Assembly (NCBI RefSeq): GCF_006345805.1
Contig: NC_043012.1
Location: 44,206,001-44,270,000 of the forward strand
Length of the DNA stretch: 64,000 nucleotides
Direction: 5' to 3'
DNA from: Octopus sinensis
Taxonomy: Eukaryota
Both the position numbers and the translations under genes were made by a program. The notes below the pieces were generated by a model. That model did no database searches. It worked only from the letters and a program-made list of their open reading frames with translations, and was not told where the DNA came from. Positions 289 to 63,192 of this stretch are shown one piece after another (position 1 is the first letter of the stretch; every line of letters starts with the position of its first letter).

Positions 289-451
289 AGGCGCAGGCGT
301 GGTTGTGTGGTATGAAGCTTGTTTCTAGAGCACTGTAGTTCAGTCCCACTGCATGGCACCTTGAGCAAGTGTCTCCTACTATAGTCTGGGGCCAACCAAA
401 GCCTTGTGAGTGGATCTGGTTGACAGAAACTGAAAGCCCGTCGCGTGTGTA

Positions 452-482
<31 letters not shown>

Positions 483-715
483 TGTGTGTGTGTGTGTCTT
501 TGTGCCTTTGTTCGTCCCCCATCAGCGCTTGACAACCGGTATTGGTGTGTTTACGTTTCCGTAACTTAGCGTTTCGGCAAAAGTGACCGATAAAATCAGT
601 ACCAGGCTTAATGAAAATTAAGTCCCGGGGTCGAGTCGTTCGACTAAAAATTCTTGAAGGCAGTACCCCAACATGGCCGCAGTCTAATGACAGAAACAAG
701 TAAAGAATAAAAGAC
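289..715 (+). mobile_element. tRNA-derived SINE, family A (octopus OR/CORE-like type)
   Basis: AGGCGCAGGCGTGG.TGTGTGGTA tRNA-like head with GTTCAGTCCCA B-box, CCTTGAGCAAGTGTC core, internal (TG)n and a CATGGCCGCAGTC..GACAGAAAC-AAAAGA tail. Same architecture recurs at least 6 times in the window. Confidence 0.9.
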
Positions 716-862
716 AAAAACAAAATGATATTGAATATTTCTACAGAACCAAAATATCAAAGCGACGAAAATATTTTGACAAATTAAATTTAAATGTTGA
801 AGTGAATCTAACGGTTTTGTGAGTTTCTTAAATCGCTTATAAACGCCTTCCACGCTGCAATT

Positions 863-3986: not shown

Positions 3987-4125
3987 TGGGACGATCTGCA
4001 TTCATAATTAAGTCATTTTACCGCGAAGCAACTACGCCAACAAGCAATATTTGTAGAACATAGAAAGGTTAGTAACCGTAACTTAATAAAGAAATCGAAA
4101 ATTAACCTTCTCCCCAGCTCTATAG

Positions 4126-4349: not shown

Positions 4350-4933
4350 AGGATTACATGCCGGTGAAATGTGCCTTTACTGAAATTTTCCGAGGAAAAA
4401 TAACTTTGGCTTTGAAGGACTCTCTTGAAAAGAAAGTATTCTCTACCAAAACAAGTAAAAAAAACCCACTAGAGACGGTATTAAAAGCTGTTAACGAAAT
4501 TGGTGATGAATATTTACAAAAGTGTGATGAACCCACATACTGGCAGATTAACGCCTGTCTATATGCTCTGGCTACTACTGTAAAACAGTACATAAATGAT
4601 ATTCAAAAAGTAAACAAAACCGAAATAACCATCAGAAAGTATCATCATAAGATTTGAAGACAGAAAAAGATAACTGGTTTACAGAAGACCATCAGTCATG
4701 TAACGATGCTTATTAAATAGAAATGATGTTTGGAGACAGCAAAAAGGGGACACTCGCTTGCAAACAGATTACTTTAAAGCAGGAGCTAAAAGCTATCAGT
4801 GAGAAACTCCGACATCAGAAGAGAATAACCGAGAGAAGAACAATAGACAAAAAATTTAACCGCAACCAGACAGCAGTATACTGAGGAGGAGCAATAAATA
4901 TCACGGAAGTTCCTTCACAAGAAGACATAGACT
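4350..4933 (+). mobile_element. degenerate R4/Dong-like non-LTR retrotransposon fragment (pre-RT region)
   Basis: Translates to WQINACLYALATTV and KQELKAISEKLRHQKRITERRTIDKKFNRNQTAVY...PSQEDIDY, resembling the N-terminal ORF region of R4/Dong elements; has stops and frameshifts. Confidence 0.55.
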
Positions 4934-4935
4934 AC

Positions 4936-5522
4936 AGGGTGTTCCATTTAAAAGTTGATTCGACTGATTAACTGTCAAAATATTGGCTCTCTCTGACTGG
5001 TTCGCTATGATTTTAGCCTTTTACAAGTGCAACGCATTCATTCGAGACTTCTTCTGGAGTCTTAATGGTGTTATCAGTGCAGCAACGTTCATTTATTGTG
5101 GAATTTTATTTTTGGTCAGGAGTTTTTTTCAATGGGCGATGGATTTACTCCTTTGACAATTGTGTTACCGATTTTAAGAGTGAATATCGAAATATGCCTC
5201 GGCTAACAAAGCAGGCGATTAATGAAAACAAGAATCATGTTCGCCGACGTACTCACCTTTCTGATGATGTTGTGGAAGATATCCGTCAACGAATTCTTCG
5301 CAGTCCCAGAAAATCTGTGCGTCGTTTGTCTCATGAAACTGGATTATCTGTTGGCAGCTGTCATGCTAAAATTGTACCCATACCGCATGTTTTCTTTACA
5401 TGAACTTATTCCTGATGATTTTACCAAAAGATTGGATTACTGCAAATGGTTTCAAGAAAGCATGGATGACAACCAACTTGACATGACCTTCTTCAGTGAC
5501 GAGGCTTAGGTTTACCTAACGG
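4936..5522 (+). mobile_element. 5' part of a Tc1/mariner (DD37D/maT-like) transposon
   Basis: TA followed by CAGGGTGTTCC TIR-like start; MVLSVQQRSFIVEFYF (DUF4817-type HTH), RSPRKSVRRLSHETGLS, LYPY..., FFSDEA (first catalytic D). Frameshifted and truncated. Confidence 0.85.
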
Positions 5523-5559: not shown

Positions 5560-6990
5560 TGTATATGTACTTTTGTATGGAAGTATTTTCTTTGTTTATC
5601 CATGCTTCATTTGTGGAATTCACTGAACATAGGTACAGTGGGAAGACCTAGAATTTGGGAGACATATTTTCTGTACATATGTTTAAGTGTTCACTGAGTG
5701 GAATCTGTCTAGTATTGGGATTTCATATTTGCTGTCGATGAATGGTCAGACTATTTCTTAGAGTAAGCTTTGTCTGACCTATGTAATCTTCATTGCATCG
5801 TTGACATTTGATAGTGTATATTAAATTCCTTGAAGAACATGTAAAATAATTTTTTACGGTAAAAATCTGTTCAGATTTGAATTTGTAAATTGTGTCTTCC
5901 ATAAGGTTGATGCAAGTGCCGTAATTGAGGCGGCTACACTTTTTGACTGTTGGTGTGGGAATTGTGGAAGGTAATTTAGCGCTAGAGAGGAATTTTTTGA
6001 GGGACTTACATTGTCTTTTACTTTTGATTATTTTGTGCATTTCGAATGCTTGTTTCATGCTTGGGTCTTATCTCAGTAGTGGGACGTTCTGGTGGATAAT
6101 ATTGTACACCTTTGTGTTTTTTAATTGTTCATATATCTGAACCTCCATGTATGCCATGACTAGATTGTCGTAAGTCGGAACAACTTTTATCCCTATCCCA
6201 GGACCCAAATATCTGTTTGTAAATATTGCCATCCAAGTCAAAAAAGTTGTTTTCGAGGATGAACTTCAATCCTTCAGTGATGAAGCTGTTTTCAATTTTG
6301 TCTGGAATTTCATGTGGGAATTTCTCAAACCAGAAATTTATTTTTGCCTCTAGTCTATATTGGTTTGGATTGCGACATAGAGTTTTACCTCATGAAATGA
6401 TACAATAGTGGTATTATTGTTCATGGATTTTGGGAAGGGGTTTAACAGGTTCAGGTCGTCCCTTACAAAGCTTGGTATATATTTTAAAACAGGTTTCAGT
6501 AATATATCTAAAAAGTTGATGAGTCCTAGTGTTCCACGCTTCGGGCCTGCTACGATTGGTCTAAATTTAAGGGATATTGTATGTTTATGCAACTTGAAGT
6601 TGGTTCTTGATAGTTTGATTCTTATGGATTTTTGAGAGAGCGTAGAAGTCTTGCAATCAAAATTGGTTAGGTAGTCACATTTTTTGTTTGTCAAACCTTT
6701 TTGATGTCTGTGAATGAGTGAGTGTTTACTTTAGCAATTGTCTTTGATTTTTGGTAATCGTTTACCTTTTCGTAGTAGGTCATGTCTTGTAATATAGACA
6801 GTATAGCTCTTTTGTTGGGTTCAATATCCATAATGGCTATAACACTTCCCTTATCTGCTTCCTTAATTATAATATTAATTTCCCGTTCCTTTCGACTGGA
6901 ATTGGGATTGATTTTAGGGTGTAGAAGTTCTTTGTAGGGGAAGGTAGATATAAATTCGCAAAATTTATCTAAAGCTTTTTGTACTATTAC
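5560..6990 (-). mobile_element. Penelope-like element remnant (RT plus GIY-YIG endonuclease), internally deleted
   Basis: KFRPIVAGP...FLDILLKP (PLE RT), FILENNFF..GNIYKQ...PTYDNLVMAYME, then FTCSSRNLIYTIKCQRCNEDYIGQT (GIY-YIG with CCHH). The YxDD region is missing. Confidence 0.9.
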
Positions 6991-11052: not shown

Positions 11053-11284
11053 TATCTTTCTTTATCTTTTTATCTTTTACTTGTTTCAGTCATTTGACTG
11101 CGGCCATGCTGGAGCACCGCCTTTAGTCGAGGAAATCGACCCCGGGACTTATTCTTTGTAAGCCCAGTACTTATTCTATCGGTCTCTTTTGCCGAACCGC
11201 TAAGTGTCGGGGACGTAAACACACCAGCATCGGTTGTCAAGCAATGCTAGGGGGACAAACACACAAACACACACACATACACAT

Positions 11285-11323
<39 letters not shown>

Positions 11324-11489
11324 TACGACAGGCTTCTTTCAGTTTCCGTCTACCAAATCCACTCATAAGGCATTGGTCGGCCCGGGGCTATAGCAGAAGA
11401 CACTTGCCCAAGATGCCACGCAGTGGGACTGAACCCGGAGCCATGTGGTTGGTTAGCAAGCTACTTACCACACAGCCACTCCTGCGCCT
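11053..11489 (-). mobile_element. SINE family A inserted near the LINE 5' end
   Basis: Full reverse copy; TAAGTT on both sides (11047-11052 and 11489-11494) is a possible TSD. Confidence 0.92.
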
Positions 11490-11670: not shown

Positions 11671-13869
11671 ATGGCTACTGGTCACCACGAGGCTAAGGCG
11701 GAAGTCAAGCGTGACGCCAAAACAAAAAAGCAGGATCCCCTGTCACCATACGCTGAACTTGACTGTTTGAACGCTACTTACACCACCACCACCACCACCA
11801 CCATCAGCACCGACAACAGCAACAACTACAAAACAAAGGTCGCAAGGCCAAGCACCGTCACCGCCACCAATGATTCCACCATCAACACCGACACCACCAG
11901 CATGGCAGCTTCTGCTACTACAACTGCTAATGATACCACTACCAACAACAATAACAATACCAAGATCACCAGACCAATCACCATCACCGCCACCAAAGAC
12001 CGTGCCGTCAATACCAATGCCGCCACTACAATATCTGCTACTACGACTGCCTCCCTTGCTACTAATACCACCGCCGCCACTAAGAACGACAATAACAACA
12101 ACAACAACAACAACAATTCCCTTCAGCCATTGTTCCCTCCATCACCAACAAGTGAAGGAGAGAAAGAAATAACCGCGACCACCAAACGAGTTGCCGAAAT
12201 TTGCGCAAACGCAGGGGCAAATTATGCAGACAACTTTCCACCCCTTGCTAGTTGCATAATCAGCAACCATAAACCTAATATGCCCATAACCCACACCCCT
12301 GCCATCAACACCAACACCACCAGCAGTAACAACAATAACAAAACAATAACAAACTTCGCCGAGGCGATAAAAGAAAAAAAAACAATAGTATCGTTTACTG
12401 CACAGCAGATAAAAGACACCAGAGCCCTAATCACCAAAGAAAACGGCAATGTGTATACCACAACACGTACTGAATGAGGAAAAAAAGAAAACGATTATTT
12501 ATAAAATAACAAACAACACAACTAAAAGTCCAGAAAAAGCAAACACAGACAAAATAGAAAAATGCCTACGCCCCATCTGGGGATACAAAGAGTATGTAAC
12601 TTGGTCGAACAAGTTTGCCCACGTACAGGTAGTTTTTCAAAATGAAGAGTTAACAAAACAATTCTCAACGCTAACTCTTCATTCAGGTGAGCTAACAATG
12701 ACACCCAGTTACCTTGGCTAGAGGGTAACAAAAGTCATTATCAATAATGTTCCGCAAATAACAGACACACTATGGATAACATCCGCCATATGCGTCGAAA
12801 TGGAGGACATAAACATCCTGCAAATCGCTGTTTCGAAACACAAGGACTGGGTGGGAAAGAGACTGGAGATTCTCCTCCACATAAGCCAAGACGGCATTAA
12901 CAAAATTCCCACCCACATACATCTTGCGGAAGACCACAAGTTGTATGTAGTAGTCGAGGGCAGAAGGCTATGCTGCTATACATGCGGCAGTGAAACAAAC
13001 CTCAAAAAGGAGTGCAAATCTGCCGCGAAACAACAACAACAACAACAGCCGCAGGAAAAACCACAAAAGCCAGCATTATTGCCCACACCATAGGATGGAC
13101 TATATGCAGAAATACATGAAAAGCAACAAAGAACGGACGAACCCAACCAAACAATACCACCACCTGCGCCAAGAACAGAATCAACACCACCAACAACAAC
13201 TAAACCAATTCCAACATCGAGAACAACAACGAAGAAGACAAGCACCAAGGATGTAGAAGAGACAATCACCACACCAAACCCCCCAGCAACACCCCCCAGC
13301 ACACCACAACAATATCTACAACTGCACAAACAGACCCAGATACTTTGCCCTAACCCCCTTCTGATTCGTCGGACTTTTCATCTAACGATGAAAGTTCGAC
13401 AGAATGGCAAATAGCCACCGGGGATAAAAGAAAAAGATTAAAAAAAAACAAACAAGAAAACGCAACCAAAGCAGGGAAATATCTGAACCCTGAAAGCTCC
13501 ATACATAACCAAACAAGCACCAACACCACAAAAACACTCACAATGCTATCAGCGATAGACACCAAAAACTCCAAACTAATGGAGTACATCACAGCCCACA
13601 CAAACATCTGTGAAGATGACTTCAAAACTAACAACCATCCACGCACTACACCACCCAAACACATCAAAATACTACATATCACAAAAACACAACACCACAC
13701 ACTCAAAGCCCTCTTTCCAAATGCGGTTGGGGGGTTCCAAAAATATCTCTCAAGAAAACTGTACAAAAACCTCCTCCAAGACACATCAAAGGACGAGGAA
13801 GCCAAAACTTTCGACACAAGTAACTCTCTGTACCTTCCTTTTTGTGTTTTAAAGCACACACCCCAATAG
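11671..13869 (+). pseudogene. LINE ORF1 (gag-like RNA-binding protein), disrupted
   Basis: About 730 codons across ORFs 11671, 12449, 12800 and 13543; Thr/Asn-rich N-terminus, RRM-like HVQVVF...TKVIINNVP, degenerate knuckle CYTCGSETNLKKEC; has in-frame stops and frameshifts. Confidence 0.8.
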
Positions 13870-13873
13870 AATC

Positions 13874-16800
13874 ATGGTCAAGATTGGTTGTGTGAATGCG
13901 CGTGGCTTGGGGTCTCCTTGGAAACAAGGATACCTCCTAAATGACATCAAGTCACACGATTTGGGAATCATAGCCATAAGTGAGACCAGACTCCACGAGC
14001 CACGGACCCTAAAGTCCATGTTTGGCGGACATTTTTTACATTTATTTTGCTCCCTGTCTGCCGAGGATGGGCGGCAGTGGCACCGCGGTACTTTTTCACG
14101 AGAACCTGGATCTCGAAGTCAAGACGATATTCGTAGACCCGGAGGGTAGACTGGTCGTTCTGGATGTCGACGGCAGCAATGGGTGCGCTTTTCGACTCGT
14201 ATCAGTCTACGCACCGCCTTTAACAGGTCGCCCGGATTTCTTTCGACGTCTAGAAGTATTCCTGGAAACGTCTCGTCCTTTACTTTTAGTGGGGGATTGG
14301 AATGCTACCTTGGACACGCATCTAGACTATGTGGGGAGAGACAAAAACAGAAGGGGATGCAAATGCCTCAGAGACCTGCTCAGACGATTCCAACTGTCTG
14401 ACAGGTACCGACTCGACCACCCAAATGCACCAACATGGACATGGAGCAACCGCAGTGAGTCGTCGAGATCGTATCTAGATAGGATACTGTGTAGGACAGT
14501 AGACAGGGATGACTTAGGATGTCCACAATTCCACACAGTCAGCTACACGGATCACAAATTCGTGACGTGTACGCTAGACTTAGATAAGGCACATAGACAG
14601 GGTCCCGGTTACTGGAAACTGAACGCATCTTTCCCGTCCAGACAGGTTTTCAGAGACAGAATCAACACGTTAGTAAAAAGGGCTTTAACGGGAGCCATTG
14701 TCAACAACAAATGGTGGTTTGCCCTCAAGAGAGCAGTAAAAGCGGAAGCAATTAGATATAGCAAGGCACTAGCCGTAGATAGAAATAGAGTAGAGGGTGA
14801 GTTAGTTAAGAAGTTAGAAGAGGCAATAAGAAGCGGCATCACATCCGACGTTTTAGCGGCGAGGTTGGCCCTTGACCAACACTTCAACGCCAAACACGAA
14901 GGATGTGCTGTCAAGGCTAGGATGCGTGCTCTAAGGATGGAATGTATTGGAGCCGCGGCGAGCTGGGAGAAGCGTTAGCACGCCGGGCGAAATGCTTTGC
15001 GGTATTTCGTCTACCTTTACGTTGTGAGTTCAAATTCCGCCGAGGTCGACTTTGCCTTTCATCCTTTTGGGGTCGATAAATTAAGCACCAGTTACGCATT
15101 AGGGTCGATGTAATCGACTTAATACCTATGTCTGTCCTTGTTTGTCCCCTCTATGTTTAGCCCCTTGTGGGTAATAAAGAAATAGGTATTGGAGCCGCGA
15201 GGGAGGCCCGGGTGGAGGAGGCGTAGCAGGGCAACAAAGCCACCATTCGGTCTCTGGTAGATGAACAAGGGCGCGAATTGCTCGAGCCCAGCAAGATGTG
15301 CGAGACATTTCAGCGGCACTTTGCCCGACTGTACGGGACGAGTGGCGAGCGTGAACGCAGGGTGGACTTCAGTGCCTACCTGCACAGCCTACCACGAGTC
15401 TCGGCAAGAGAGGCAGAGTGCTGCGAGGGTGCCATCACGGCGGCGGATGTGCGGGACGCAATGGCAGAATGCTCGAGAGACAAATCGCCGGGTTTAGATG
15501 GTCTGCCCTACGAGTTTTACAATTGTATGCCAGACTTGTTTGGAGACGTCTTGGCAGCGGTATACTGCAACTGGCAGCAAAACGGGAGCATACCCGGTTT
15601 TGTGAGTCGAGAGGCCGTAACGCTGCTGAAGAAAGATCCAAACAAGGGGGACATTATAGATAACTTTAGACCAATCACCCTGCTCAATGCAGACCAGAAA
15701 ATTTTGACCAAGGTGTTAGCCAAGAGGTTGGCCCTTCTCATCGAGAAACTGGTCGACAAGGCACAAACGTGCGCCGTGCCGGGCCGGAGCATCCATGACG
15801 ACCTCCATCTGATGCGCTACATCATAGACAGAGTAGTTAAGGAACCCGGCATGGGTGGGGCCCTGATCAATTTGGATCAATCGAAAGCCTTCGATAGGGT
15901 AGACCATCGATACTTGGAGGCAGACTTGAGAGCGGCTGGTTTCGGTCCCGTCTTCCGCGGCTGGATAGCTTCCTTGTACAGAGGCATCCGTTCGGTAGTT
16001 CGCGTAAATGGACATCTATCGAGACCTTTCGACATTGCACGTTCGGTCCGTCAGGGATGCCCCCTCTCGTCGCTTCTATACGTATTGACTCTCGAGACAC
16101 TACTGCGGAAGCTGGCGACTCTGAGGGGCATCCCGCGAGAATTGGGATGCGTGACGAGCGTGTCTGCATACGCGGACGACGTCACCGTCATAGTGTCTAG
16201 CCACGAGCACATCAAGCTGGTCGGCGAGACACTGAAAGACTACGAAGCGGTGACAGGAGCAAAAATCAACCGGGAAAAGTCAGTGGGCTTGCGGCTCCGC
16301 ACCTGGAGAAGCAAGCCCATGTCGTCCACCAGTACCTCCGTCGTGGGACCCTGGACGGACGACCCGGTTGAGTTGCTCGGGGTCTGGTTCGGTCCGGACC
16401 TCCAAATAGAGAAGAACTGGAACGAGATAACGAGTAGGGTGGTCACTCTCGCCCGGCAATGGGCCGAGAGGAAACTGTCCCTAAAAGGTCGGGCGGAGGT
16501 GGCGAACACGTACATTGCGTCCATCATCTACTACCGCCTGTACGTCGTACCTTGTCCCGACCCTACCATTACCAAACTAGAACGCATTCTCTTCCGCTTC
16601 TTGTGGAAAGGATGCGTCCCGATGGTCAGACGATCCATTTGCTGTCAACACCCGTTAAAAGGAGGTGCTGGGCATGCGTGGTTGATGATGCGCAAACACG
16701 CGCTGAGACTGCGACATCTCCGGCTCTATGTAGACGACGGTGAACAGGTGTGGTCGCCGTTTGTGAGGCACGCATTCTCGCAGCTCGTCTCCATGACCGA

Positions 16801-17538
16801 ACTGCAGTCGTGGATCAAAAAGAGGCCGAGGAAGGGCGAATGGCACCGCGAGTGTCGCGTCGCTCTCAAGCAACTCTGCCGTCCCGGGTCGACCTTGAGT
16901 GACTTCAACACAACCAAAGCATTCTATAGGGGATTAGTGGAGGGGAGGTACGACGACGATCTTGGGGCAAACCTGGGCGTCGACGAGGAATACCTGACAC
17001 GTCTGTTTGAAACGACTTTCGGGCCGGGACCTATGGACAACTTCCAGAAATCCCTGGCCTGGCGGTGCTACCGAGAAGCGCTACCCGTTCGGGATAAGCT
17101 CTTTAGACATGGCTCGAGAAACACGGGGCCGACCTACCCGAGATGCGGGCAGAGCGACGAAACCGTTCTGCACGCAATCGTGCAGTGTCCAACAATCTCC
17201 GACCTGTGGGCTTATGTCGAACGACTGCAGTCACGTGTAGGACGTGTCGGTTTATCAGCCGAGTCTATCGTTAATATCGTCACGCCTCCTTCCTTCAAAC
17301 GGGAAGGAAGAGCTATTTTTACCATACAGAATGTATCTGGTGGACGCACCTGAAAGGATTAGAGACAAACACTTTCCTCTCTGGTCAATCTCTCATCAAC
17401 TTCTTCAAGTATCACTTGAAGAGGAAAGTGAGAGTAGAGAGGCAAGTTTTGTCTAGTGAATGTTTTAAAAAAAGATGGGTGAATGCAGCAAGGATGGCAC
17501 GTATGAATGACAAAGTCACCTTGACTATGATCCTATGA
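13874..17538 (+). pseudogene. LINE ORF2: AP endonuclease, reverse transcriptase and C-terminal zinc finger
   Basis: NARGL, ISETRL, GDWNA, SYLDRI, TDHK, GPGYWKLNAS (L1/Tx1 hallmark), KSPGLDG, FRPITLLN, DQSKAFDRV, RQGCPLS, AYADD, PRCGQSDETVLHAIVQC. Frameshifts near 14025 and 17320, one TAG and a SINE insertion. Confidence 0.95.
14958..15185 (+). mobile_element. tRNA-derived SINE, family B, inside LINE ORF2
   Basis: GCGAGCTGG...GAGTTCAAATTCC...GTCGACTTTGCCTTTCATCC...; flanked by the 14-bp duplication GTATTGGAGCCGCG (14944-14957 and 15186-15199). Confidence 0.95.
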
Positions 17539-17890
17539 ACCGTAAAAATTAATACAGAGAATTGCTTATTTGTAAAAAAAAGATATATATATATAACATG
17601 TGACTTCATTGACCGAGGTTACCGTGGTCTTTTCCGTAGGCTTTTCTTTCCACGGGTAAACCTCACCTGTCCTCCCCTTTACACTTTATATTGACATTTC
17701 TGTGATAACGATCCCTATTGATCGATTTTCTTTTCCTTTTCCTTTTTTTATCCCCCCCTTTTGTCCTCTTTCTTTCCTTTTACGATCCCTTTTGATCGAA
17801 TTCCAAACCCCCTTTTTATCCCCAAAAGAAAAGCTCTACCTTGTAATTTGTCCTGTCTGTGTGCAGCCCTGTGTGGCTAAGAAAGAAACA

Positions 17891-22734: not shown

Positions 22735-23143
22735 TTTTTTTTCTCTTTTATTTGTTTGTCATTTGACTGCAGCCATGCTGGAGCACCGCCTTTAGTCGAG
22801 CAAATCGACCCCAGGACTTATTCTTTGGAAGCCTAGTACTTATTCTATTGGTCTCTTTTGCCGAACCGCTAAGTTACAGGGAGTAAACACACGGCCATCG
22901 GTTGTCAAGCGATGTTGGGGAGACAAACACAGACAAACAAACATATACACACACACATACATATATACATACATATATACGACGGGCTTCTTTCAGTTTC
23001 CGTCTACCAAATCCACTCACAAAGCTTTGGTCGGACCGTGGCTATAGTAGAAGGCACTTTTCCAAGGTGCCACGCAGTGCGAATGAACCTAGAACCGTGT
23101 GGTTGGTAAGCAAGCTACTTACCACACAGCCACTCCTGCGCCT
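22735..23143 (-). mobile_element. SINE family A
   Basis: Full reverse copy with head and tail. Confidence 0.92.
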
Positions 23144-34450: not shown

Positions 34451-34802
34451 GCATTTATGCATGTATGTATGTTTCGGTGTGTAAGCTATCTTCTCTTTTG
34501 AAACCAGAGTTAGTGATTGCGTTATTTTAGTAAGGGGCCTGCCTTATCAAATATTTCCTTTGAGGAGTAGAGATTAAATATGCTATTATTAATATTAGCT
34601 ACACTGTTTCTAGAACTATCGGGGAATGATAAGACTGTTCATGTCTATACCCAAGTTTTTCATTAGGCTTATGGTAGGGCTTGTCAGAACACAAGTTTTG
34701 GGCTAGAGAAGCGTCGAAGGAACCTACTTTAAAAAGGCTAGTTAGTGGTTACTGTGATTTTGAGGCCTAATTGGCCAAAGGGAGATATGAGATTTTTCCT
34801 AA

Positions 34803-34921
34803 ATATACGGCCATATCACGTTGAAATCACCGGTTCTCGTCTGATCACAGAAGTTAAGCAACGTCGAGCCTAGTCAGTACTTAGATGGGTGACCGCTTGG
34901 GAAACCTAGGTGCAGTAAGCA
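34803..34921 (+). rRNA. 5S: isolated 5S rRNA copy (probably a retrocopy or SINE head rather than a functional array gene)
   Basis: TACGGCCATATCACGTTGAAATCACCGGTTCTCGTCTGATCACAGAAGTTAAGCAACGTCG...GATGGGTGACCGCTTGGGAA...GGTGCAGTAAGC; single copy with no oligo-T terminator immediately after. Confidence 0.9.
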
Positions 34922-34996
34922 TAGCACATACAGCGGTGGTGCCCCAGCATGGCCGCGGCCTCCGGGCTAAAATATTTTTAAGGACTTTAAGGATTT
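34803..34996 (+). mobile_element. 5S head plus SINE-type tail chimera (candidate SINE3)
   Basis: After a ~12-bp linker: GGTGGTGCCCCAGCATGGCCGCGGCC-TCCG-GGCT, homologous to the family A tail, then (TTTAAGGA)2. Confidence 0.65.
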
Positions 34997-37900
34997 ATAC
35001 CAAGTGTATATTAATCACAGCCGGGAGCTATGCCCGATCCATCATCACAATGTAGACTGTCTCCTTAAGATGTCTTTTTGGAAAGATTTAAAACTGAAAC
35101 AATCGTTAATTCAAAAGGGGATAATGGCTGACTAGAGCTTTGTAAGTTTTCTGATAGAATCAATTAGGGCAGCAGGAAAATACTATGATTCTAGAAGTTG
35201 GGGAATAAAGTCAAAAGTCTTTTGTAATGAAAAATATTTTTTAAATTCAGACACCACAGCTTTATCAATTTATCAATTTAAAAGTTGTTCTTAATTTACC
35301 TCTGCCTGCTCGTCCGTGACTAACTTGATAAAATTAGAGACAGTGTGTGTAAAGATCGATTATAATATTTAGACAAGAGATAGATCAATAGAGTTTTGTC
35401 AAAAGGATGTTTTAAGCTACAAGCCAATTTGGTTTGTCAGTTTCGCTTTCCATTATTTCTTTTAAGTATATATTTGTGTGGTTTTCTGCAAAACGTCAAA
35501 ATCTTGATCCAGTATTCAACTATTAAGTTTCATCATGGTGCATTCCATATCGTGTAGCATTCCTGCAGTTCTAATGGGGGTATCGGAGTTAATGATGGGT
35601 ATTTTGCTATTAGCATTTGTTTTAGTATTCTTCTGTGATTGTACTCCCAAACATAATACATTACGGTTGCAGTTCTTTTTATTTTAGATCATAGATCAAA
35701 ATGATTTAAGATCTTGAGAAAAAAACAGTTTTCATAAATGTATTTTATTCTTTCGCTCTTCGAAACATCTTGTGAGTTACGAGTACTCTAGTGGTTAATA
35801 TTGATTCGAGGCGACGAGTTTTTTTCTGAACTTTTAGAGTTTAACATATTTTAAAATTATCGGCTTCTCTCCGAGAAATGAGTTAAATTTTCGATCATTC
35901 TAGTTACCTTTGGGGAAGTTATTTTTTTCTTCACAATATGTAGTTTCCGTAAAATATGTTACTGCTCATTTTACACCTTTATGTTGTTATCTATATCGTA
36001 TCACTCTCTGATTTTGCAACATAAGTTGTTGATGCTACAGTCATCGTGTGTGGTTTCAGAATAACTGTAGACAGATAGCCATTGATTATCAACTACTTAT
36101 CACATGTTTTAATATGGTCTCTAGCGATAACATCGATATATTTAATCATGAGAGTGGTTGTTTTCCCTACAACCATCCAAGAAACACTTAATGTGAACTT
36201 GGAGGAATTAAGAAGACTCACCTCAGACTACGAGCTTAGAATGACTTTTGGATTAGATACTGCAGCCATTTCAGTTGGATTGATTATATGTGGAAATATC
36301 TGTGTGTACTGACTTTTGATCGTTGCGAAGGCGTCGAAATTGATGGAAGTTTATCAGTTTTTAACGTTATTGATATTCTCTTCCTTGGAAGCTTTTGGCT
36401 GGTTTCGTCAGAATGGATTTAGTGTCAATTCAACAACAGCAACAACAAAGAGCGAACAGCAACATTAGCGAAAGTGGGAAAAATTGTTGATTAGACATTA
36501 GAGTAGCATTAGAGTAGCATTCCATGCGACCAGAAATTAACAACAAAATACTACTAGAACCTATAAATGATGAAAATTTGAAGTGAAGTGACAAAAATAT
36601 CAATAACACGAATTAAAACATACTGATGCTAAATGCCAAAACATAAAAGCCTCTTGGAATGTAGAAATTTTGATGTTGAGTATCCATGGCTGGACTAAGC
36701 TTGTGTGGAACCCGCAAGCAAATGTCATAAAGCATTATTTAAAACAAGGAGTTCTAAGTTAAAAACCTAGTTATTTTATCGAATTATGATTATTTTCAGA
36801 AATCCAACTGCATATATGAAGCGATCAGTTAATCCGAAAGCGAGGCAATTGAAATGAATACAAGGGCTTCACTATTATTTTGCATTACGTTTGTTAATTA
36901 TCTGATAACAGATATATTTCAGACATTTAAGTGGCTGAGGCGTGATAAATTATGTTGCAAATTTAATTGAGTTGGCACTTGATTTCGTTTTCAACCAAAC
37001 CTAAAAACACAATTTAAGTGCTACAACTTCATGCGAATTCAATAATATATAGTATTCTTACTTAAGCACCTAAAGAGCACAGATCAAATATTTTCCCCTG
37101 ATACACAGCTTTAATATAACGTAAATTTGTTTTATGGCCTAACATTGAAAATATGGATCTATTAATTTAAACTTATTTGTGTTATAGTTTTACTTAACAG
37201 CATTAAGCTAATGTAGAAACGGAACACAATAAATTCTTTCTTACCTGTTTAAAAGTCTCAGTTTGATTTAATGGACTAAGTTACCATTACGATGTCTATA
37301 ATATATTTGTAATAATTTGTTTTGTTCAATCGATCGTAACTACGAGGAAAATAATAGCTAAGCTTGGTTACTGTATGACGTGCTTTATGCATCGAGATAA
37401 AGAAAGAGAATAGCAAATCTATTAAGTAGCATCCGGCAAAAATGAATTAAATCTACATATTTATAATTTGTGTTCAGTTGAAGGCATCTTAGTGCTACAG
37501 CAACAAAGATGGTGCTGAATCGCTTGCAATTGATACTTTGCAAGTGTTTAATTTAAAGTATTGGATTTCAGAAGTATTTCGAGTTTTGGGTCAAACTTAA
37601 ACACCTAGATGTTTCATAAAAGCTGAAGGCAGTGCGCTAATATAGTAATAAAGCATACAACATGGATCTCTTGAAAGATCGTAGCATATGCATTGTGAAT
37701 ATCAAGCAATGCTAGAATATAGCAAATATCAAAGTAAGAGGCAAAATGTTAACCGGAGCAGTATCTTTAATTAAGATACATGCGAAGTTTAACGTTTATG
37801 ATGAGGGTAGATTTAATAAGACAATATGGAAATTAATTTGTCAGTGATGAAACAAGTGCAGCGGCAACAACAACAACAAGGATGACACTTAGGTATGCAG

Positions 37901-47329: not shown

Positions 47330-47563
47330 CCTATACTCTTTTATTTGTTTCAGTCATTTGACTGTGGCCATGCTGGTGCACCGCCTTTAGACGATCAAAT
47401 CGACCCCAGGACTTATTCTTTGTAAGCCTAGTTCTTATTCTATCGGTCTCTTTTGACGTAAACACACCAGCAGCGGTTGTCAAGCGATGTTGGGGGACAA
47501 ACAGAGATACACAAACATACACACACACACTCACGCACACACACACACCACACACACATATAT

Positions 47564-47621
<58 letters not shown>

Positions 47622-47781
47622 ATATATATACGACAGTTTCCGTCTACCAAATCCACTCACAAGGCTTTGGTCGGCCCGAGGCTATAGTAGAAGACACTTG
47701 CCCAAGGTGCCACGGAGTGGGACTGAACCAGGAACCATGTAGTTGGTAAGCAAGCTACTTACCACACAGCCACTCCTGCGC
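47330..47781 (-). mobile_element. SINE family A
   Basis: Full reverse copy. Confidence 0.92.
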
Positions 47782-60299: not shown

Positions 60300-61160
60300 A
60301 CAAAATGCAAGTAAACGAGGGAAAATTTGAGCTGATGCATTTTGGAAGAGAGACTATTCTAAAACTGCCATACTCTCTTCCTTCAGGGGAACTACTCACA
60401 GCATCTAATAATATCAGAGACCTAGGTGTAATTGTTGATAACAATCTCAGTTGGAGTGCCCACATCAACAATAAGCTCGATATACCTAGTAGGATGAGCT
60501 CCTGGATCTTAAGAAACTTCCGGTCCAGAGAACAAGGTGTCATCATTCCACTTTTCTCCTCCTTTGTACGGCCACACCTCGAATACTGCTGCCCCCTGTA
60601 TACAAAACAAAACATCTCAAAAACTGGATCACCCCAGAGGGCACTCACTAAACGAATTAAGGGCATGACTGATCTCGATTACTAGGACCGCCTTAAAGCC
60701 TAGAAACTCTACTCTCGCCAGCGCCGCCGCAAGCAGTACATCATTTGCTGATGTGGAGAATATCCCGACCTGAACATTAGCTTCAAGGTTCATCCAAGGC
60801 TGGGACCATGGGCCATACGTCCCCTACCTAATTCAGGATCACAACATATAGGTACACTGCGACACAATTTCTTTTCCTCAGCAGGCCCTGCCCTGTTTAA
60901 CATTGTCCCAAAACTGATCAAAGAGGAAAAGGATCCCATCACCTTTAAACGGAGTCTGGACAAATTTCTTCAAGGAATACCAGATAAGCCACCCATACCT
61001 GGATACAACTCACTCAACAAGAACTCACTACTTGAATGGACCATAATACCACAAGACTTGACTTAAAAAGGATTTAGATAATCCTATCAGGTGGTGCTAT
61101 TAAGTTAGACATGGCTTGGACCAATCTTTAGTCGAAACATATCTAAATTTTATCTAAGTT
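60300..61160 (+). mobile_element. CR1/L2-like LINE, 5'-truncated
   Basis: DLGVIVDNNLSWSAHI, LFSSFVRPHLEYC, QRALTKRIKGM..LDY, then 3' UTR with a tandem tail. Confidence 0.9.
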
Positions 61161-61279: not shown

Positions 61280-61995
61280 ATATAATATATTATGGCTGCA
61301 CCCTCGTTATCGAGTATGGCCATTGCACGAAGCTTAACTGTTACTGGTGCTGTGATCGAATGTGACTTTTTAGCCCAGCTAAAGATCTACAATGTCTTGT
61401 ACAAAATTGAAAACTAAAACCTTTACTGGTAATAGCCGGCTGTAGTTGTAACTGGGCTTCATGTACCTTGCATATCGTTTAAGTCCTCCTGCCGAATTAC
61501 ACTCTCTTCCACATGCCCGACAGATATGATTAGTATGGTGTGTTACACCACCACACAGTGGCCAGGTTGTCACTCATCTGTCTCGTTTTGACTACGAAGA
61601 TGACTCATGAGTCCAGCTTACTGAGGCAGGGTCTTGCACAGACATTGCATGTCAGAATCAAAGGAAGACCCTTCCCTTCTGGAAGTGTAACAGCGATGCC
61701 CTTCCTGACATCTCTCCTTACTTTCTCATGTGCAACTCGAGATTTCTCAAACGTGGCTGTCCCCTCATGCACAATCCTTCTCCACATACTACGATCAATA
61801 GCTATGCCTTCCCATGTGTCAGGAGAGATGCAAGCATCTCTTAAGGAAGCCTTCAGCAAGTCCTTATACCTCTTTTTTGGTTTATGTGGAGGTCGTTCTC
61901 CTTTAGCTAACTCTCCATAAAAGACTTGTTTTGGCATCCTTGAATCCTTCATTCTGACCAGATGACCACTCCATCTGAGCCTTTGCTTTAACACA
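61280..61995 (-). mobile_element. RTE/BovB-like LINE 3' end
   Basis: QRLRWSGHLVRMKDSRMPKQVFYGEL...RYKDLLK; C-terminal CNVCARPC and CRACGREC zinc-finger remnants. Confidence 0.92.
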
Positions 61996-62236: not shown

Positions 62237-62600
62237 AGGCGCAGCCATAGGTCTGTGGTAAGAAGCTTGCTTCCCAACCACATAGCTTCGGGTTCAGTCC
62301 CACTGCATGGCACCTTGGGCAAGTGTCTTCTACTGGAGCCTTGTGAGTGGATTTGGTAGACGGAAACTGAAAGGAGCATGTCGTATATATACCTGTGTGT
62401 TTGCGTGTCTGTGTTTGTTTCCCCACCACCATCACCTGACAACCGATGTTGTTGTGATTACATACCCGTAAATTAGCGGTTCGGCAAAAGAGACAGACAA
62501 AATAAGTACTAGGATTACAAATAATAAATCCTGGGGTTGATTTGTTCGACTAAAACGCGATGTTTCAGCATGGCCGCAGCCTAGTGACTGAAACAAGTCA
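62237..62600 (+). mobile_element. SINE family A
   Basis: Head, core and CAGCATGGCCGCAGCC tail. Confidence 0.9.
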
Positions 62601-63192
62601 AAGAGTAAAAGAGTGGTGTGTGTGTGTGTGTGTGTGTGTGTATGCGTGTGTGCGTGTATGTGTGTGTGTGTGCGTTTGTGTGTGTGTGCGCGCGCGTGTG
62701 TGTATTTGTAGTAAATTTGACTTACAGCTGTTTCGAGTAGTCGCTATAGGTTCGTTTTTGATTAGTTTACTTAGTTGGCCCATTGATCAGTTTAGGAAAT
62801 TTGTACAACCATGAGAATTATTGCTACCTTCGTCACTTATTTCTGTTATACACACTCATACACATACATGTTCGCATTTATACACATATTTTGATACCAA
62901 GTATTCGCTTTTCGTTTAATTTCATATATGTAGCATTAGACTATTTCTCTAAACTGGATCTTTTTTCTTTTTTTATTGAGTTCTATGTTAGAGGTCATTA
63001 TTCCTGTAATTACGACGTCAGTTCATTTCCTTATGGTAATTTTAAATGACTCTTTTTGTAAGGTTCTCTACAAAAGAAACTGAGCGCATTTATGTTCTAT
63101 GTGCTTCGTATATTACTGTACAACACTGGTTTCTACACCATAGCATATATATTAAGTAAAATTCACCTGACCATACATTTTCATATTCATGT

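What the first reader, a model, noticed from the sequence alone, without database searches (positions are those of the whole stretch)
34803..34996. 5S rRNA fused to a retroposon tail: candidate 5S-derived SINE (SINE3) in a cephalopod
Seen: an essentially full-length 5S with recognisable box A (AGTTAAGC) and box C (GATGGGTGACCGC), no terminator, a ~12-bp linker, then GGTGGTGCCCCAGCATGGCCGC. This is the same 3' module that ends the tRNA-SINE family A copies here (GGCGGTGCTCCAGCATGGCCGC). The terminal stem-loop is kept by different bases (GCC-TCCG-GGC versus CAGTC-AAAT-GACTG), followed by a (TTTAAGGA)n tail. Established: 5S-headed SINEs are rare and known mainly from vertebrates and insects. Inference: either a new SINE3 family or a one-off template-switch chimera.
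Basis: partly seen in the sequence, partly recalled or inferred. Interest (0 to 1): 0.75.

Follow-up and report, generated by a model that had tools for sequence, protein, structure and literature searches.

The report
5S rRNA copy fused to retroposon tail
A worn, full-length copy of the 5S ribosomal RNA gene sits alone in this cephalopod sequence, joined to the same short 3' end that the local abundant SINEs carry, so it looks like a 5S-headed SINE, but one copy cannot show whether it belongs to a family or is a one-off.

Summary
Rfam finds one full-length 5S rRNA match at 34803-34921 (+), 94 bits against a threshold of 38. It is the only 5S in 64 kb, so this is not an rDNA array. No T-run follows it. 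After a 13-nt linker comes GGTGGTGCCCCAGCATGGCCGC (34935-34956). This matches, with 2-3 mismatches, the 3' module of five copies of the abundant SINE "family A"; shuffles expect 0 matches. A 4-bp hairpin follows in the same register, then two 9-nt tail repeats.

This is the layout of a SINE3: a 5S head with its internal Pol III promoter, plus a LINE-type 3' recognition cassette. It is not a working 5S gene. Helix I is broken and no terminator directly follows.

I could not test whether it belongs to a dispersed family. None of the collections I could search hold this genome or any cephalopod copy. The window has one copy, no convincing target-site duplication and no partner LINE.

Literature gives context. 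About 24,000 5S-derived loci were reported in the giant squid as likely SINEs, and a 2024 review lists no molluscan 5S-SINE.

My estimates: family member about 0.55, one-off template-switch chimera about 0.3. If it is a family, it is a new member of a known kind.

The parts
34803..34921 (+). 5S rRNA-derived head. It is full length, with helices II-V largely intact and helix I broken at 4 of 9 pairs.
   Evidence: Rfam RF00001, 94 bits, model positions 1-120 of 120. Pair table.
34852..34859 (+). Core of box A of the 5S internal control region (AGTTAAGC). It is unchanged.
   Evidence: Read directly from the sequence. The promoter assignment comes from established knowledge of the Xenopus-type 5S internal control region.
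34884..34896 (+). Core of box C (GATGGGTGACCGC). The flanking box C positions 81 and 95, and intermediate-element position 70, are changed.
   Evidence: The comparison is to a remembered metazoan-type 5S, not to the host gene.
34922..34934 (+). 13-nt linker TAGCACATACAGC of unknown origin. It has no T-run terminator.
   Evidence: It has no similarity to family A or to anything else in the window.
34935..34956 (+). 22-nt module GGTGGTGCCCCAGCATGGCCGC, shared with the 3' ends of family A SINEs (20 of 22 identical to the best copy).
   Evidence: (0.00 expected by chance).
34957..34968 (+). Hairpin GGCC-TCCG-GGCT (G.U, G-C, C-G, C-G). It is in the same register as the family A hairpin AGTC-AAAT-GACT.
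34975..34979 (+). TTTTT, the first possible Pol III terminator after the 5S start. A transcript ending here would be about 175 nt and would stop before most of the repeat tail.
   Evidence: The reading as a terminator is inference.
34977..34994 (+). Two tandem 9-nt units, TTTAAGGAC and TTTAAGGAT, forming a LINE/SINE-type short-repeat tail. The 3' end of the element is not sharply defined.
11078..11127 (-). Family A SINE 3' cassette (module, hairpin and the start of the GTAAAAGA-type tail).
   Evidence: 74.9 bits.
22747..22796 (-). Family A SINE 3' cassette.
47342..47391 (-). Family A SINE 3' cassette.
653..702 (+). Family A SINE 3' cassette, a more diverged copy.
62550..62599 (+). Family A SINE 3' cassette, a more diverged copy. 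In its hairpin region it is intermediate between family A and the candidate.

Best explanation
Positions 34803 to about 34994 are a decayed retroposed copy of a composite element of about 190 nt. A complete 5S rRNA sequence, carrying the internal Pol III promoter (box A, intermediate element, box C), is joined without its terminator to a LINE-type 3' recognition cassette. The cassette is a 22-nt module, a small hairpin and short tandem repeats. This is a SINE3-type architecture.

Proposed mechanism (inferred):
1. While copying an RNA that ended in this cassette, a LINE reverse transcriptase switched template to 5S rRNA and created the fusion.
2. The fusion carries its own Pol III promoter and the tail that the LINE enzyme recognises, so it could be transcribed and re-copied in trans.
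3. The copy here is most probably one old, inactive member of such a dispersed family.

Shown: the anatomy, the solitary position and the homology of the cassette with family A SINE tails. Inferred: Pol III transcription, LINE dependence and membership of a multi-copy family.
For: - The 5S is full length at 94 bits and is the only one in 64 kb.
- No terminator follows the 5S.
- The 22-nt module occurs only at the 3' ends of five family A SINE copies and here. Shuffles expect 0.00 matches, and a covariance model of the cassette finds exactly these six sites.
- The hairpin is in the same register in all six.
- The tail has two tandem 9-mers.
- Measured against a remembered metazoan-type 5S, three helix pairs (14-65, 70-105, 81-95) changed G:C to A:U on both sides. 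The probability is about 0.01 under a neutral simulation biased towards GC-to-AT changes, or 0.08 if only Rfam-modelled pairs are counted. In the same comparison, by my own reading of the two sequences, 7 of 9 CpGs are kept. Both points fit descent from a structured master lineage rather than pure decay of a pseudogene.
- Meeting one such element in a single 64-kb window is far more likely if there are thousands of copies than if there are a handful (inference).
- The giant squid genome paper reports about 24,000 5S-derived loci, 'many likely SINEs' (PMC6962438).
Against: - Only one copy could be examined, so no second copy shows the same junction.
- There is no convincing target-site duplication. 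The best candidate is GGGAGATATG at 34780 against GGGAGCTATG at 35023, 10 nt with one mismatch. By my own estimate about 0.2 such matches are expected by chance, and it lies well outside the element ends.
- This exact tail variant (hairpin GGCC-TCCG-GGCT plus TTTAAGGAY repeats) and a LINE carrying it are absent from the rest of the window.
- A TTTTT run inside the tail would stop Pol III before the repeats in this copy.
- The intermediate element and the edges of box C carry substitutions.
- The compensatory-change argument depends on a 5S reference recalled from memory. If the host's own 5S has those A:U pairs, the argument vanishes.
- 93 kb from other cephalopod or unidentified loci held no 5S.
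Confidence: 0.55

Rival explanations
1. It is a one-off template-switch chimera. During one retroposition of a LINE or SINE RNA ending in this cassette, the reverse transcriptase jumped onto a mature 5S rRNA. This produced a single dead-on-arrival insertion that never propagated.
For: - The structure (small RNA at the 5' side, the 3' part of a retroelement at the 3' side) is what such chimeras look like. This mechanism is cited for SINE origins (PMC4824008; PMC4758252).
- Only one copy is seen.
- The 5S runs to its natural 3' end.
- The copy is decayed, and a T5 run lies inside the tail.
Against: - The chance of meeting a unique chimera in one 64-kb window is very small unless many windows were screened (inference).
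- Three both-sided G:C to A:U changes in 5S helices are unexpected for a neutral pseudogene (conditional on the reference used).
- CpGs are mostly retained (my own reading of the sequences).
- Tens of thousands of 5S-derived loci exist in a squid.
Confidence: 0.3
2. Two independent events lie side by side: a 5S-derived pseudogene, and next to it a heavily 5'-truncated copy (about 60-70 nt) of a LINE or SINE that ends in the cassette.
For: - The 13-nt linker is unexplained.
- Extremely 5'-truncated retroelement copies are common (general knowledge).
- No target-site duplication brackets the whole unit.
Against: - It needs two rare events within 13 nt of each other, in the same orientation, with the 5S ending exactly at its mature 3' end.
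- It does not explain how a 5S pseudogene without any tail of its own got there.
Confidence: 0.08
3. It is a solitary (orphon) or variant 5S rRNA gene with ordinary downstream spacer, and the match to the SINE tail is coincidental.
For: Box A and the box C core are intact. Helices II, IV and V are paired, and some pairs are maintained by double changes.
Against: - 4 of the 9 helix I pairs and two helix III pairs are broken.
- There is no terminator for 54 nt.
- The 22-nt module match has 0.00 chance expectation and sits in the same cassette context as five SINE tails.
Confidence: 0.03

Closest known systems
SINE3, the 5S rRNA-derived SINEs: zebrafish SINE3 (Kapitonov and Jurka 2003), fruit-bat MEG-RS/RL, springhare Ped-1, and lepidopteran HaSE3 and relatives
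   Same: The head is a 5S copy that keeps the internal Pol III promoter and lacks its terminator. It is followed by non-5S sequence and a LINE-type 3' end with short repeats. The total length is about 190 nt, within the SINE range (PMC3531059; PMC10886601; PMC10946416).
   Different: The host is a cephalopod mollusc, and no molluscan SINE3 is listed in the 2024 review. The body is almost absent, only a 13-nt linker. The tail cassette is shared with the resident non-5S SINE family. Copy number is unknown.
5S-derived loci of the giant squid Architeuthis dux (about 24,000 Rfam hits, 'likely SINEs')
   Same: These are dispersed 5S-derived sequences in a cephalopod genome, interpreted as SINEs (PMC6962438).
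   Different: The squid is a decapodiform, whereas the closest relatives of the LINE in this window are octopod (Argonauta). Homology with the present element could not be tested.
Template-switch chimeric retrogenes (small RNA fused to the 3' part of a LINE, SINE or mRNA; Buzdin et al. 2003)
   Same: A small Pol III RNA sits at the 5' side and a retroelement 3' end at the 3' side. This is the probable birth mechanism of the fusion.
   Different: Those are single insertions with target-site duplications, made by L1 with poly(A) ends. Here the tail is a specific cassette, no target-site duplication is seen, and propagation is possible in principle.
Family A SINE of this window (an abundant octopod SINE with an internal TA/TG microsatellite)
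   Same: It has the same 3' cassette: a module 20 of 22 identical, a hairpin in the same register, then A-rich short repeats.
   Different: The head is different (not 5S) and there is a long body of about 300 nt. The tail repeat unit differs (GTAAAAGA-type against TTTAAGGAY). There is no similarity upstream of the module.
Cassandra and Ajax TRIMs (5S promoter inside LTRs)
   Same: A mobile element has captured a 5S-derived Pol III promoter.
   Different: They need two LTR copies, each holding a 5S. Here there is one 5S and no direct repeat of the region anywhere in the window.

Membership tests
SINE3 (5S rRNA-derived SINE; SINEBase criteria, PMC3531059) | The head has at least 60% identity to 5S rRNA over at least 60 nt. 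| tested here: met
   The Rfam 5S_rRNA model matches full length at 94 bits. 103 of 120 positions are identical to a remembered metazoan-type 5S.
SINE3 (5S rRNA-derived SINE; SINEBase criteria, PMC3531059) | The internal Pol III type 1 promoter is retained (box A, intermediate element, box C). | tested here: inconclusive
   The cores of box A and box C are intact. Substitutions lie at position 70 (intermediate element) and at 81 and 95 (box C edges). Activity was not assayed.
SINE3 (5S rRNA-derived SINE; SINEBase criteria, PMC3531059) | Extra non-5S sequence (body or tail) distinguishes it from a plain 5S pseudogene, and there is no terminator after the 5S part. | tested here: met
   A linker, module, hairpin and repeats occupy 34922-34994. 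The first T-run is at 34975.
SINE3 (5S rRNA-derived SINE; SINEBase criteria, PMC3531059) | It is short (under 1 kb) and interspersed, not tandem. | tested here: met
   It is about 190 nt and is the only 5S in 64 kb.
SINE3 (5S rRNA-derived SINE; SINEBase criteria, PMC3531059) | [quoted passage not shown] | not testable with these tools
   No collection searched here holds this genome or returned a cephalopod copy. The window holds one copy.
SINE3 (5S rRNA-derived SINE; SINEBase criteria, PMC3531059) | The 3' end is shared with a partner LINE. | tested here: inconclusive
   The cassette is shared with another SINE family. No LINE in the window carries it, and the ends of the LINEs at 14022-17353 and near 61300 differ.
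SINE3 (5S rRNA-derived SINE; SINEBase criteria, PMC3531059) | Target-site duplications flank the insertion. | tested here: inconclusive
   There is no match adjacent to the ends. The best 10-mer with one mismatch is at chance level. Many LINE clades make short duplications or none.
Functional 5S rRNA gene | All five helices are intact and a T-run terminator directly follows position about 120. | tested here: not met
   4 of the 9 helix I pairs and two helix III pairs are broken. The first T-run is 54 nt downstream.
5S rDNA tandem array | Repeated 5S units are separated by spacers. | tested here: not met
   There is a single 5S hit at both the gathering and the E<=1 thresholds, and the region has no self-similarity elsewhere in the window.
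Cassandra/Ajax-type TRIM | The 5S lies inside each of two flanking LTRs. | tested here: not met
   There is one 5S and no direct repeat of the region.
One-off template-switch chimera | The junction is unique in the genome and the whole unit is flanked by one target-site duplication. | not testable with these tools
   Uniqueness needs the genome. No target-site duplication was detected.

The most novel reading that the evidence does not exclude
Octopod cephalopods harbour a true SINE3 family, which would be the first characterised in molluscs. Its 5S head has evolved as a structured RNA, with G:C to A:U compensatory changes in helices II, IV and V. Its 3' recognition cassette is a swappable module shared with the dominant non-5S SINE family. 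This would show that unrelated Pol III heads in one genome recruit the same LINE machinery by exchanging tails.
Probability: 0.35. Interest if true: 0.5.

Novelty: new member of a known kind. Interest (0 to 1): 0.35.

Why it matters
5S-headed SINEs are rare. They made up 2.3% of SINE families in the first SINEBase release, and a 2024 review lists them only from reptiles, insects, fish and mammals.

A cephalopod family would add an independent origin in molluscs. It would also give a sequence-level explanation for the very high 5S-like locus counts reported in the giant squid. Finally, it would show two different Pol III heads sharing one LINE-recognition cassette, a clean case of modular SINE assembly by template switching.

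If it is only a single chimera, it is an ordinary by-product of LINE activity.

Tried and rejected
1. I scanned the public DNA collections for box C followed 35-60 nt later by the module. The viral collection gave 0 hits. The metagenome and prokaryote-genome collections gave 5 hits each, and the five metagenome hits that I inspected are chance matches in GC-rich (60-64% GC) bacterial-type sequence. Further viral-contig scans for the family A tail and for the 5S core also gave 0. These scans therefore returned no cephalopod copy.

2. I tried to reach other copies through spurious ORFs:
- The 56-aa ORF across the junction has no relatives by word-index search. By full HMMER search it has only two unrelated tandem-repeat proteins. 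It is not on record as a called gene.
- A family A-derived ORF also found nothing.

3. I tried to sample cephalopod DNA through the window's LINE reverse transcriptase:
- The best relatives are 69% identical (an unnamed assembly, GCA_024449705.1) and 64% identical (Argonauta hians).
- The loci fetched (L011-L015, 93 kb) contain no 5S and no module.
- The sample is far too small to be informative.

4. The target-site duplication search gave nothing above chance.

5. The whole-element RNA fold is no better than shuffled sequence, z = -0.37. I make no claim about global structure.

6. The covariation test of the tail hairpin is not significant with six sequences.

7. Searching paper full text for the module or for a mollusc 5S string gave nothing useful. 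The cephalopod 5S paper by Walker and Doolittle (1983) and the octopus genome paper are not held.

8. I rejected the TRIM/Cassandra-like, 5S array and working 5S gene readings (see the membership tests).

Full report
**What is there**

The Rfam covariance model for 5S rRNA matches window 34803-34921 on the + strand. It covers model positions 1-120 of 120, at 94 bits against a gathering score of 38, with E 4.5e-19. A permissive scan of all 64 kb (E up to 1) finds no second 5S. Every other hit in that scan is a microRNA-type false positive on TA/TG microsatellites. A word-7 BLAST of 34700-35150 against the window finds no other copy of the 5S or its flanks. This is therefore a solitary 5S-derived sequence. 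It is not part of an rDNA array, and it is not inside a pair of LTRs.

**State of the 5S part**

- The box A core AGTTAAGC (34852-34859) and the box C core GATGGGTGACCGC (34884-34896) are intact.
- On the Rfam structure, helices II, IV and V are paired. Helix I fails at 4 of its 9 pairs, and two pairs of helix III are broken.
- No T-run follows the 5S end. The first run of four or more T is TTTTT at 34975-34979, 54 nt downstream.
- It is therefore not a working 5S gene.

**The 3' part**

A 13-nt linker, TAGCACATACAGC (34922-34934), follows the 5S. Then comes GGTGGTGCCCCAGCATGGCCGC (34935-34956).

- Allowing three mismatches, this 22-mer occurs at three other places in the window, against 0.00 expected from shuffles. 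Two more diverged copies also exist.
- A gapped alignment shows that similarity continues for about 20 nt past the module.
- Both families have a small hairpin in exactly the same register. Family A has A-U, G-C, U-A, C-G with loop AAAT. The candidate has G.U, G-C, C-G, C-G with loop TCCG (34957-34968).
- One pair is changed on both sides and one becomes a wobble pair. With six sequences this is not statistically distinguishable from shuffles.
- Upstream of the module there is no similarity.
- Downstream, the candidate has two tandem 9-mers, TTTAAGGAC TTTAAGGAT (34977-34994). Family A has GTAAAAGA-type repeats instead.
- A covariance model of the cassette, run with filters off, finds only these six sites in the window. 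No LINE here carries the cassette. The 3' ends of the window's LINEs (14022-17353 and about 61300) are different.

**What it is**

The anatomy is that of a 5S-headed SINE (SINE3): a complete 5S with its internal Pol III promoter and no terminator, joined to a LINE-type 3' recognition cassette and a short-repeat tail, about 190 nt in all.

The most likely origin, by inference, is a template switch of a LINE reverse transcriptase from an RNA ending in this cassette onto 5S rRNA. The literature cites this mechanism for composite SINE heads (PMC4824008; PMC4758252). Such a fusion is at once a potential SINE. What separates a SINE family from a dead chimera is whether the fusion propagated.

**Family or one-off?**

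This could not be tested directly.

- The viral, metagenome and prokaryote collections returned only chance bacterial matches or nothing.
- The junction ORF has no relatives.
- The window's genome is not in the protein or contig collections. The best relatives of its LINE reverse transcriptase are 69% and 64% identical, the second from Argonauta hians. This supports an octopod-like cephalopod origin.
- 93 kb of fetched loci held no 5S.
- No target-site duplication stands out.

*Indirect evidence that leans towards a family*

- Meeting such an element in one 64-kb window is improbable for a unique chimera, but expected at thousands of copies (inference). I do not know how many windows were screened, which weakens this argument.
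- The giant squid genome paper reports about 24,000 loci derived from 5S rRNA and calls many of them likely SINEs (PMC6962438).
- Against a metazoan or mollusc-type 5S that I recalled from memory, the head has 17 differences. Six of them form three both-sided G:C to A:U changes, at pairs 14-65, 70-105 and 81-95. In a neutral simulation with the observed bias towards GC-to-AT changes, three or more such pairs arise with P of about 0.01. Counting only the pairs in the Rfam model gives two pairs and P of 0.08.
- In the same comparison, by my own reading of the two sequences, seven of nine CpGs survive. Both points suggest descent from a structured master lineage.
- Both points depend on the unknown host 5S sequence and are leads, not results.

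*Evidence that leans towards a one-off*

- There is a single copy, and this tail variant occurs nowhere else in the window.
- A T5 run inside the tail would stop Pol III in this copy.
- The intermediate element and the edges of box C carry substitutions.

**Comparison with what is known**

SINEBase defines a SINE as a short interspersed repeat with at least 100 copies and at least 60% identity to tRNA, 5S or 7SL RNA over at least 60 nt. Extra sequence distinguishes it from RNA pseudogenes (PMC3531059). The head, the extra-sequence and the interspersion criteria are met. The copy-number criterion is untestable here, and the partner LINE is unidentified.

SINE3 families are known from fish, some mammals, reptiles and insects, and they have arisen several times independently (PMC10886601; PMC10946416). 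The review lists no molluscan family.

**Verdict**

The architecture is right and the array-spacer alternative is excluded, but the family question remains open.
- My estimates are about 0.55 for a member of a dispersed 5S-SINE family, 0.3 for a one-off chimera, and the rest for adjacent insertions or a variant 5S gene.
- If it is a family, it is a new member of a known kind in a new phylum. That is of moderate interest, and easy to settle with one genome-wide search.

Noticed in passing
window 11671-17600 (+): There is a near full-length LINE. It has ORF1-like reading frames at 11671-12477 and 12800-13093, an endonuclease ORF at 14022-14978 (Pfam Exo_endo_phos) and a reverse transcriptase ORF at 15278-17353 (Pfam RVT_1 and zf-RVT), split across frames. 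The closest proteins are 69% identical (an unnamed assembly, GCA_024449705.1) and 64% identical (Argonauta hians). Its 3' end does not carry the SINE cassette.
   Followed up: partly
window about 380-720 (+), 11060-11400 (-), 22740-23070 (-), 47330-47665 (-), 62239-62610 (+): Each family A SINE copy contains an internal TA/TG microsatellite between two conserved halves. These and other microsatellites in the window produce more than 100 sub-threshold Rfam 'mir-297/mir-466'-type hits, which are false positives.
   Followed up: partly
window 62239-62320 (+) and other family A heads: Neither ARAGORN nor Rfam recognises the family A head as a tRNA, even in a 221-nt search. Only a box B-like GGTTCAGTCCC is visible. 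The label 'tRNA-SINE' is therefore not verified here.
   Followed up: partly
L011 (Argonauta hians, GCA_054771915.1) about 3990-4080, 4867-4940 and 6360-6446: Sequences about 77-83% identical to the 5' part of family A occur in Argonauta. Neither the family A 3' half nor the 22-nt module was found in this 22-kb locus. The head or body may be older than the tail, or the tails may have been exchanged.
   Followed up: no
window 34808-34814 and 34948-34955: The 5' end of the 5S (CGGCCAT) is complementary to part of the module (ATGGCCG), and the minimum-energy fold pairs them. The fold as a whole is no better than shuffled sequence (z = -0.37), so this is probably coincidence.
   Followed up: partly
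window 34798-34808: Just upstream of the Rfam match, CCT is followed by AAATAT and then ACGGCC. Removing those six bases would restore the canonical 5S start (G)CCTACGGCC. This could be a small AT insertion in the 5S 5' end or chance. It shifts the possible 5' boundary by 5 nt.
   Followed up: no
window 60305-60685 (+) and 61605-61994 (-): Two further ORF fragments look like the C-terminal parts of LINE reverse transcriptases by eye, but have no Pfam hit at E<=0.01. The second ends in a TA microsatellite near 61290.
   Followed up: no
L013/L014 (ENA ERZ21867824, contig ctg122906l): An unidentified eukaryotic contig in an ENA metagenome assembly carries identical 1153-aa LINE ORFs repeated head to tail about every 6.6 kb. 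This is a tandem array of a LINE rather than dispersed copies.
   Followed up: no
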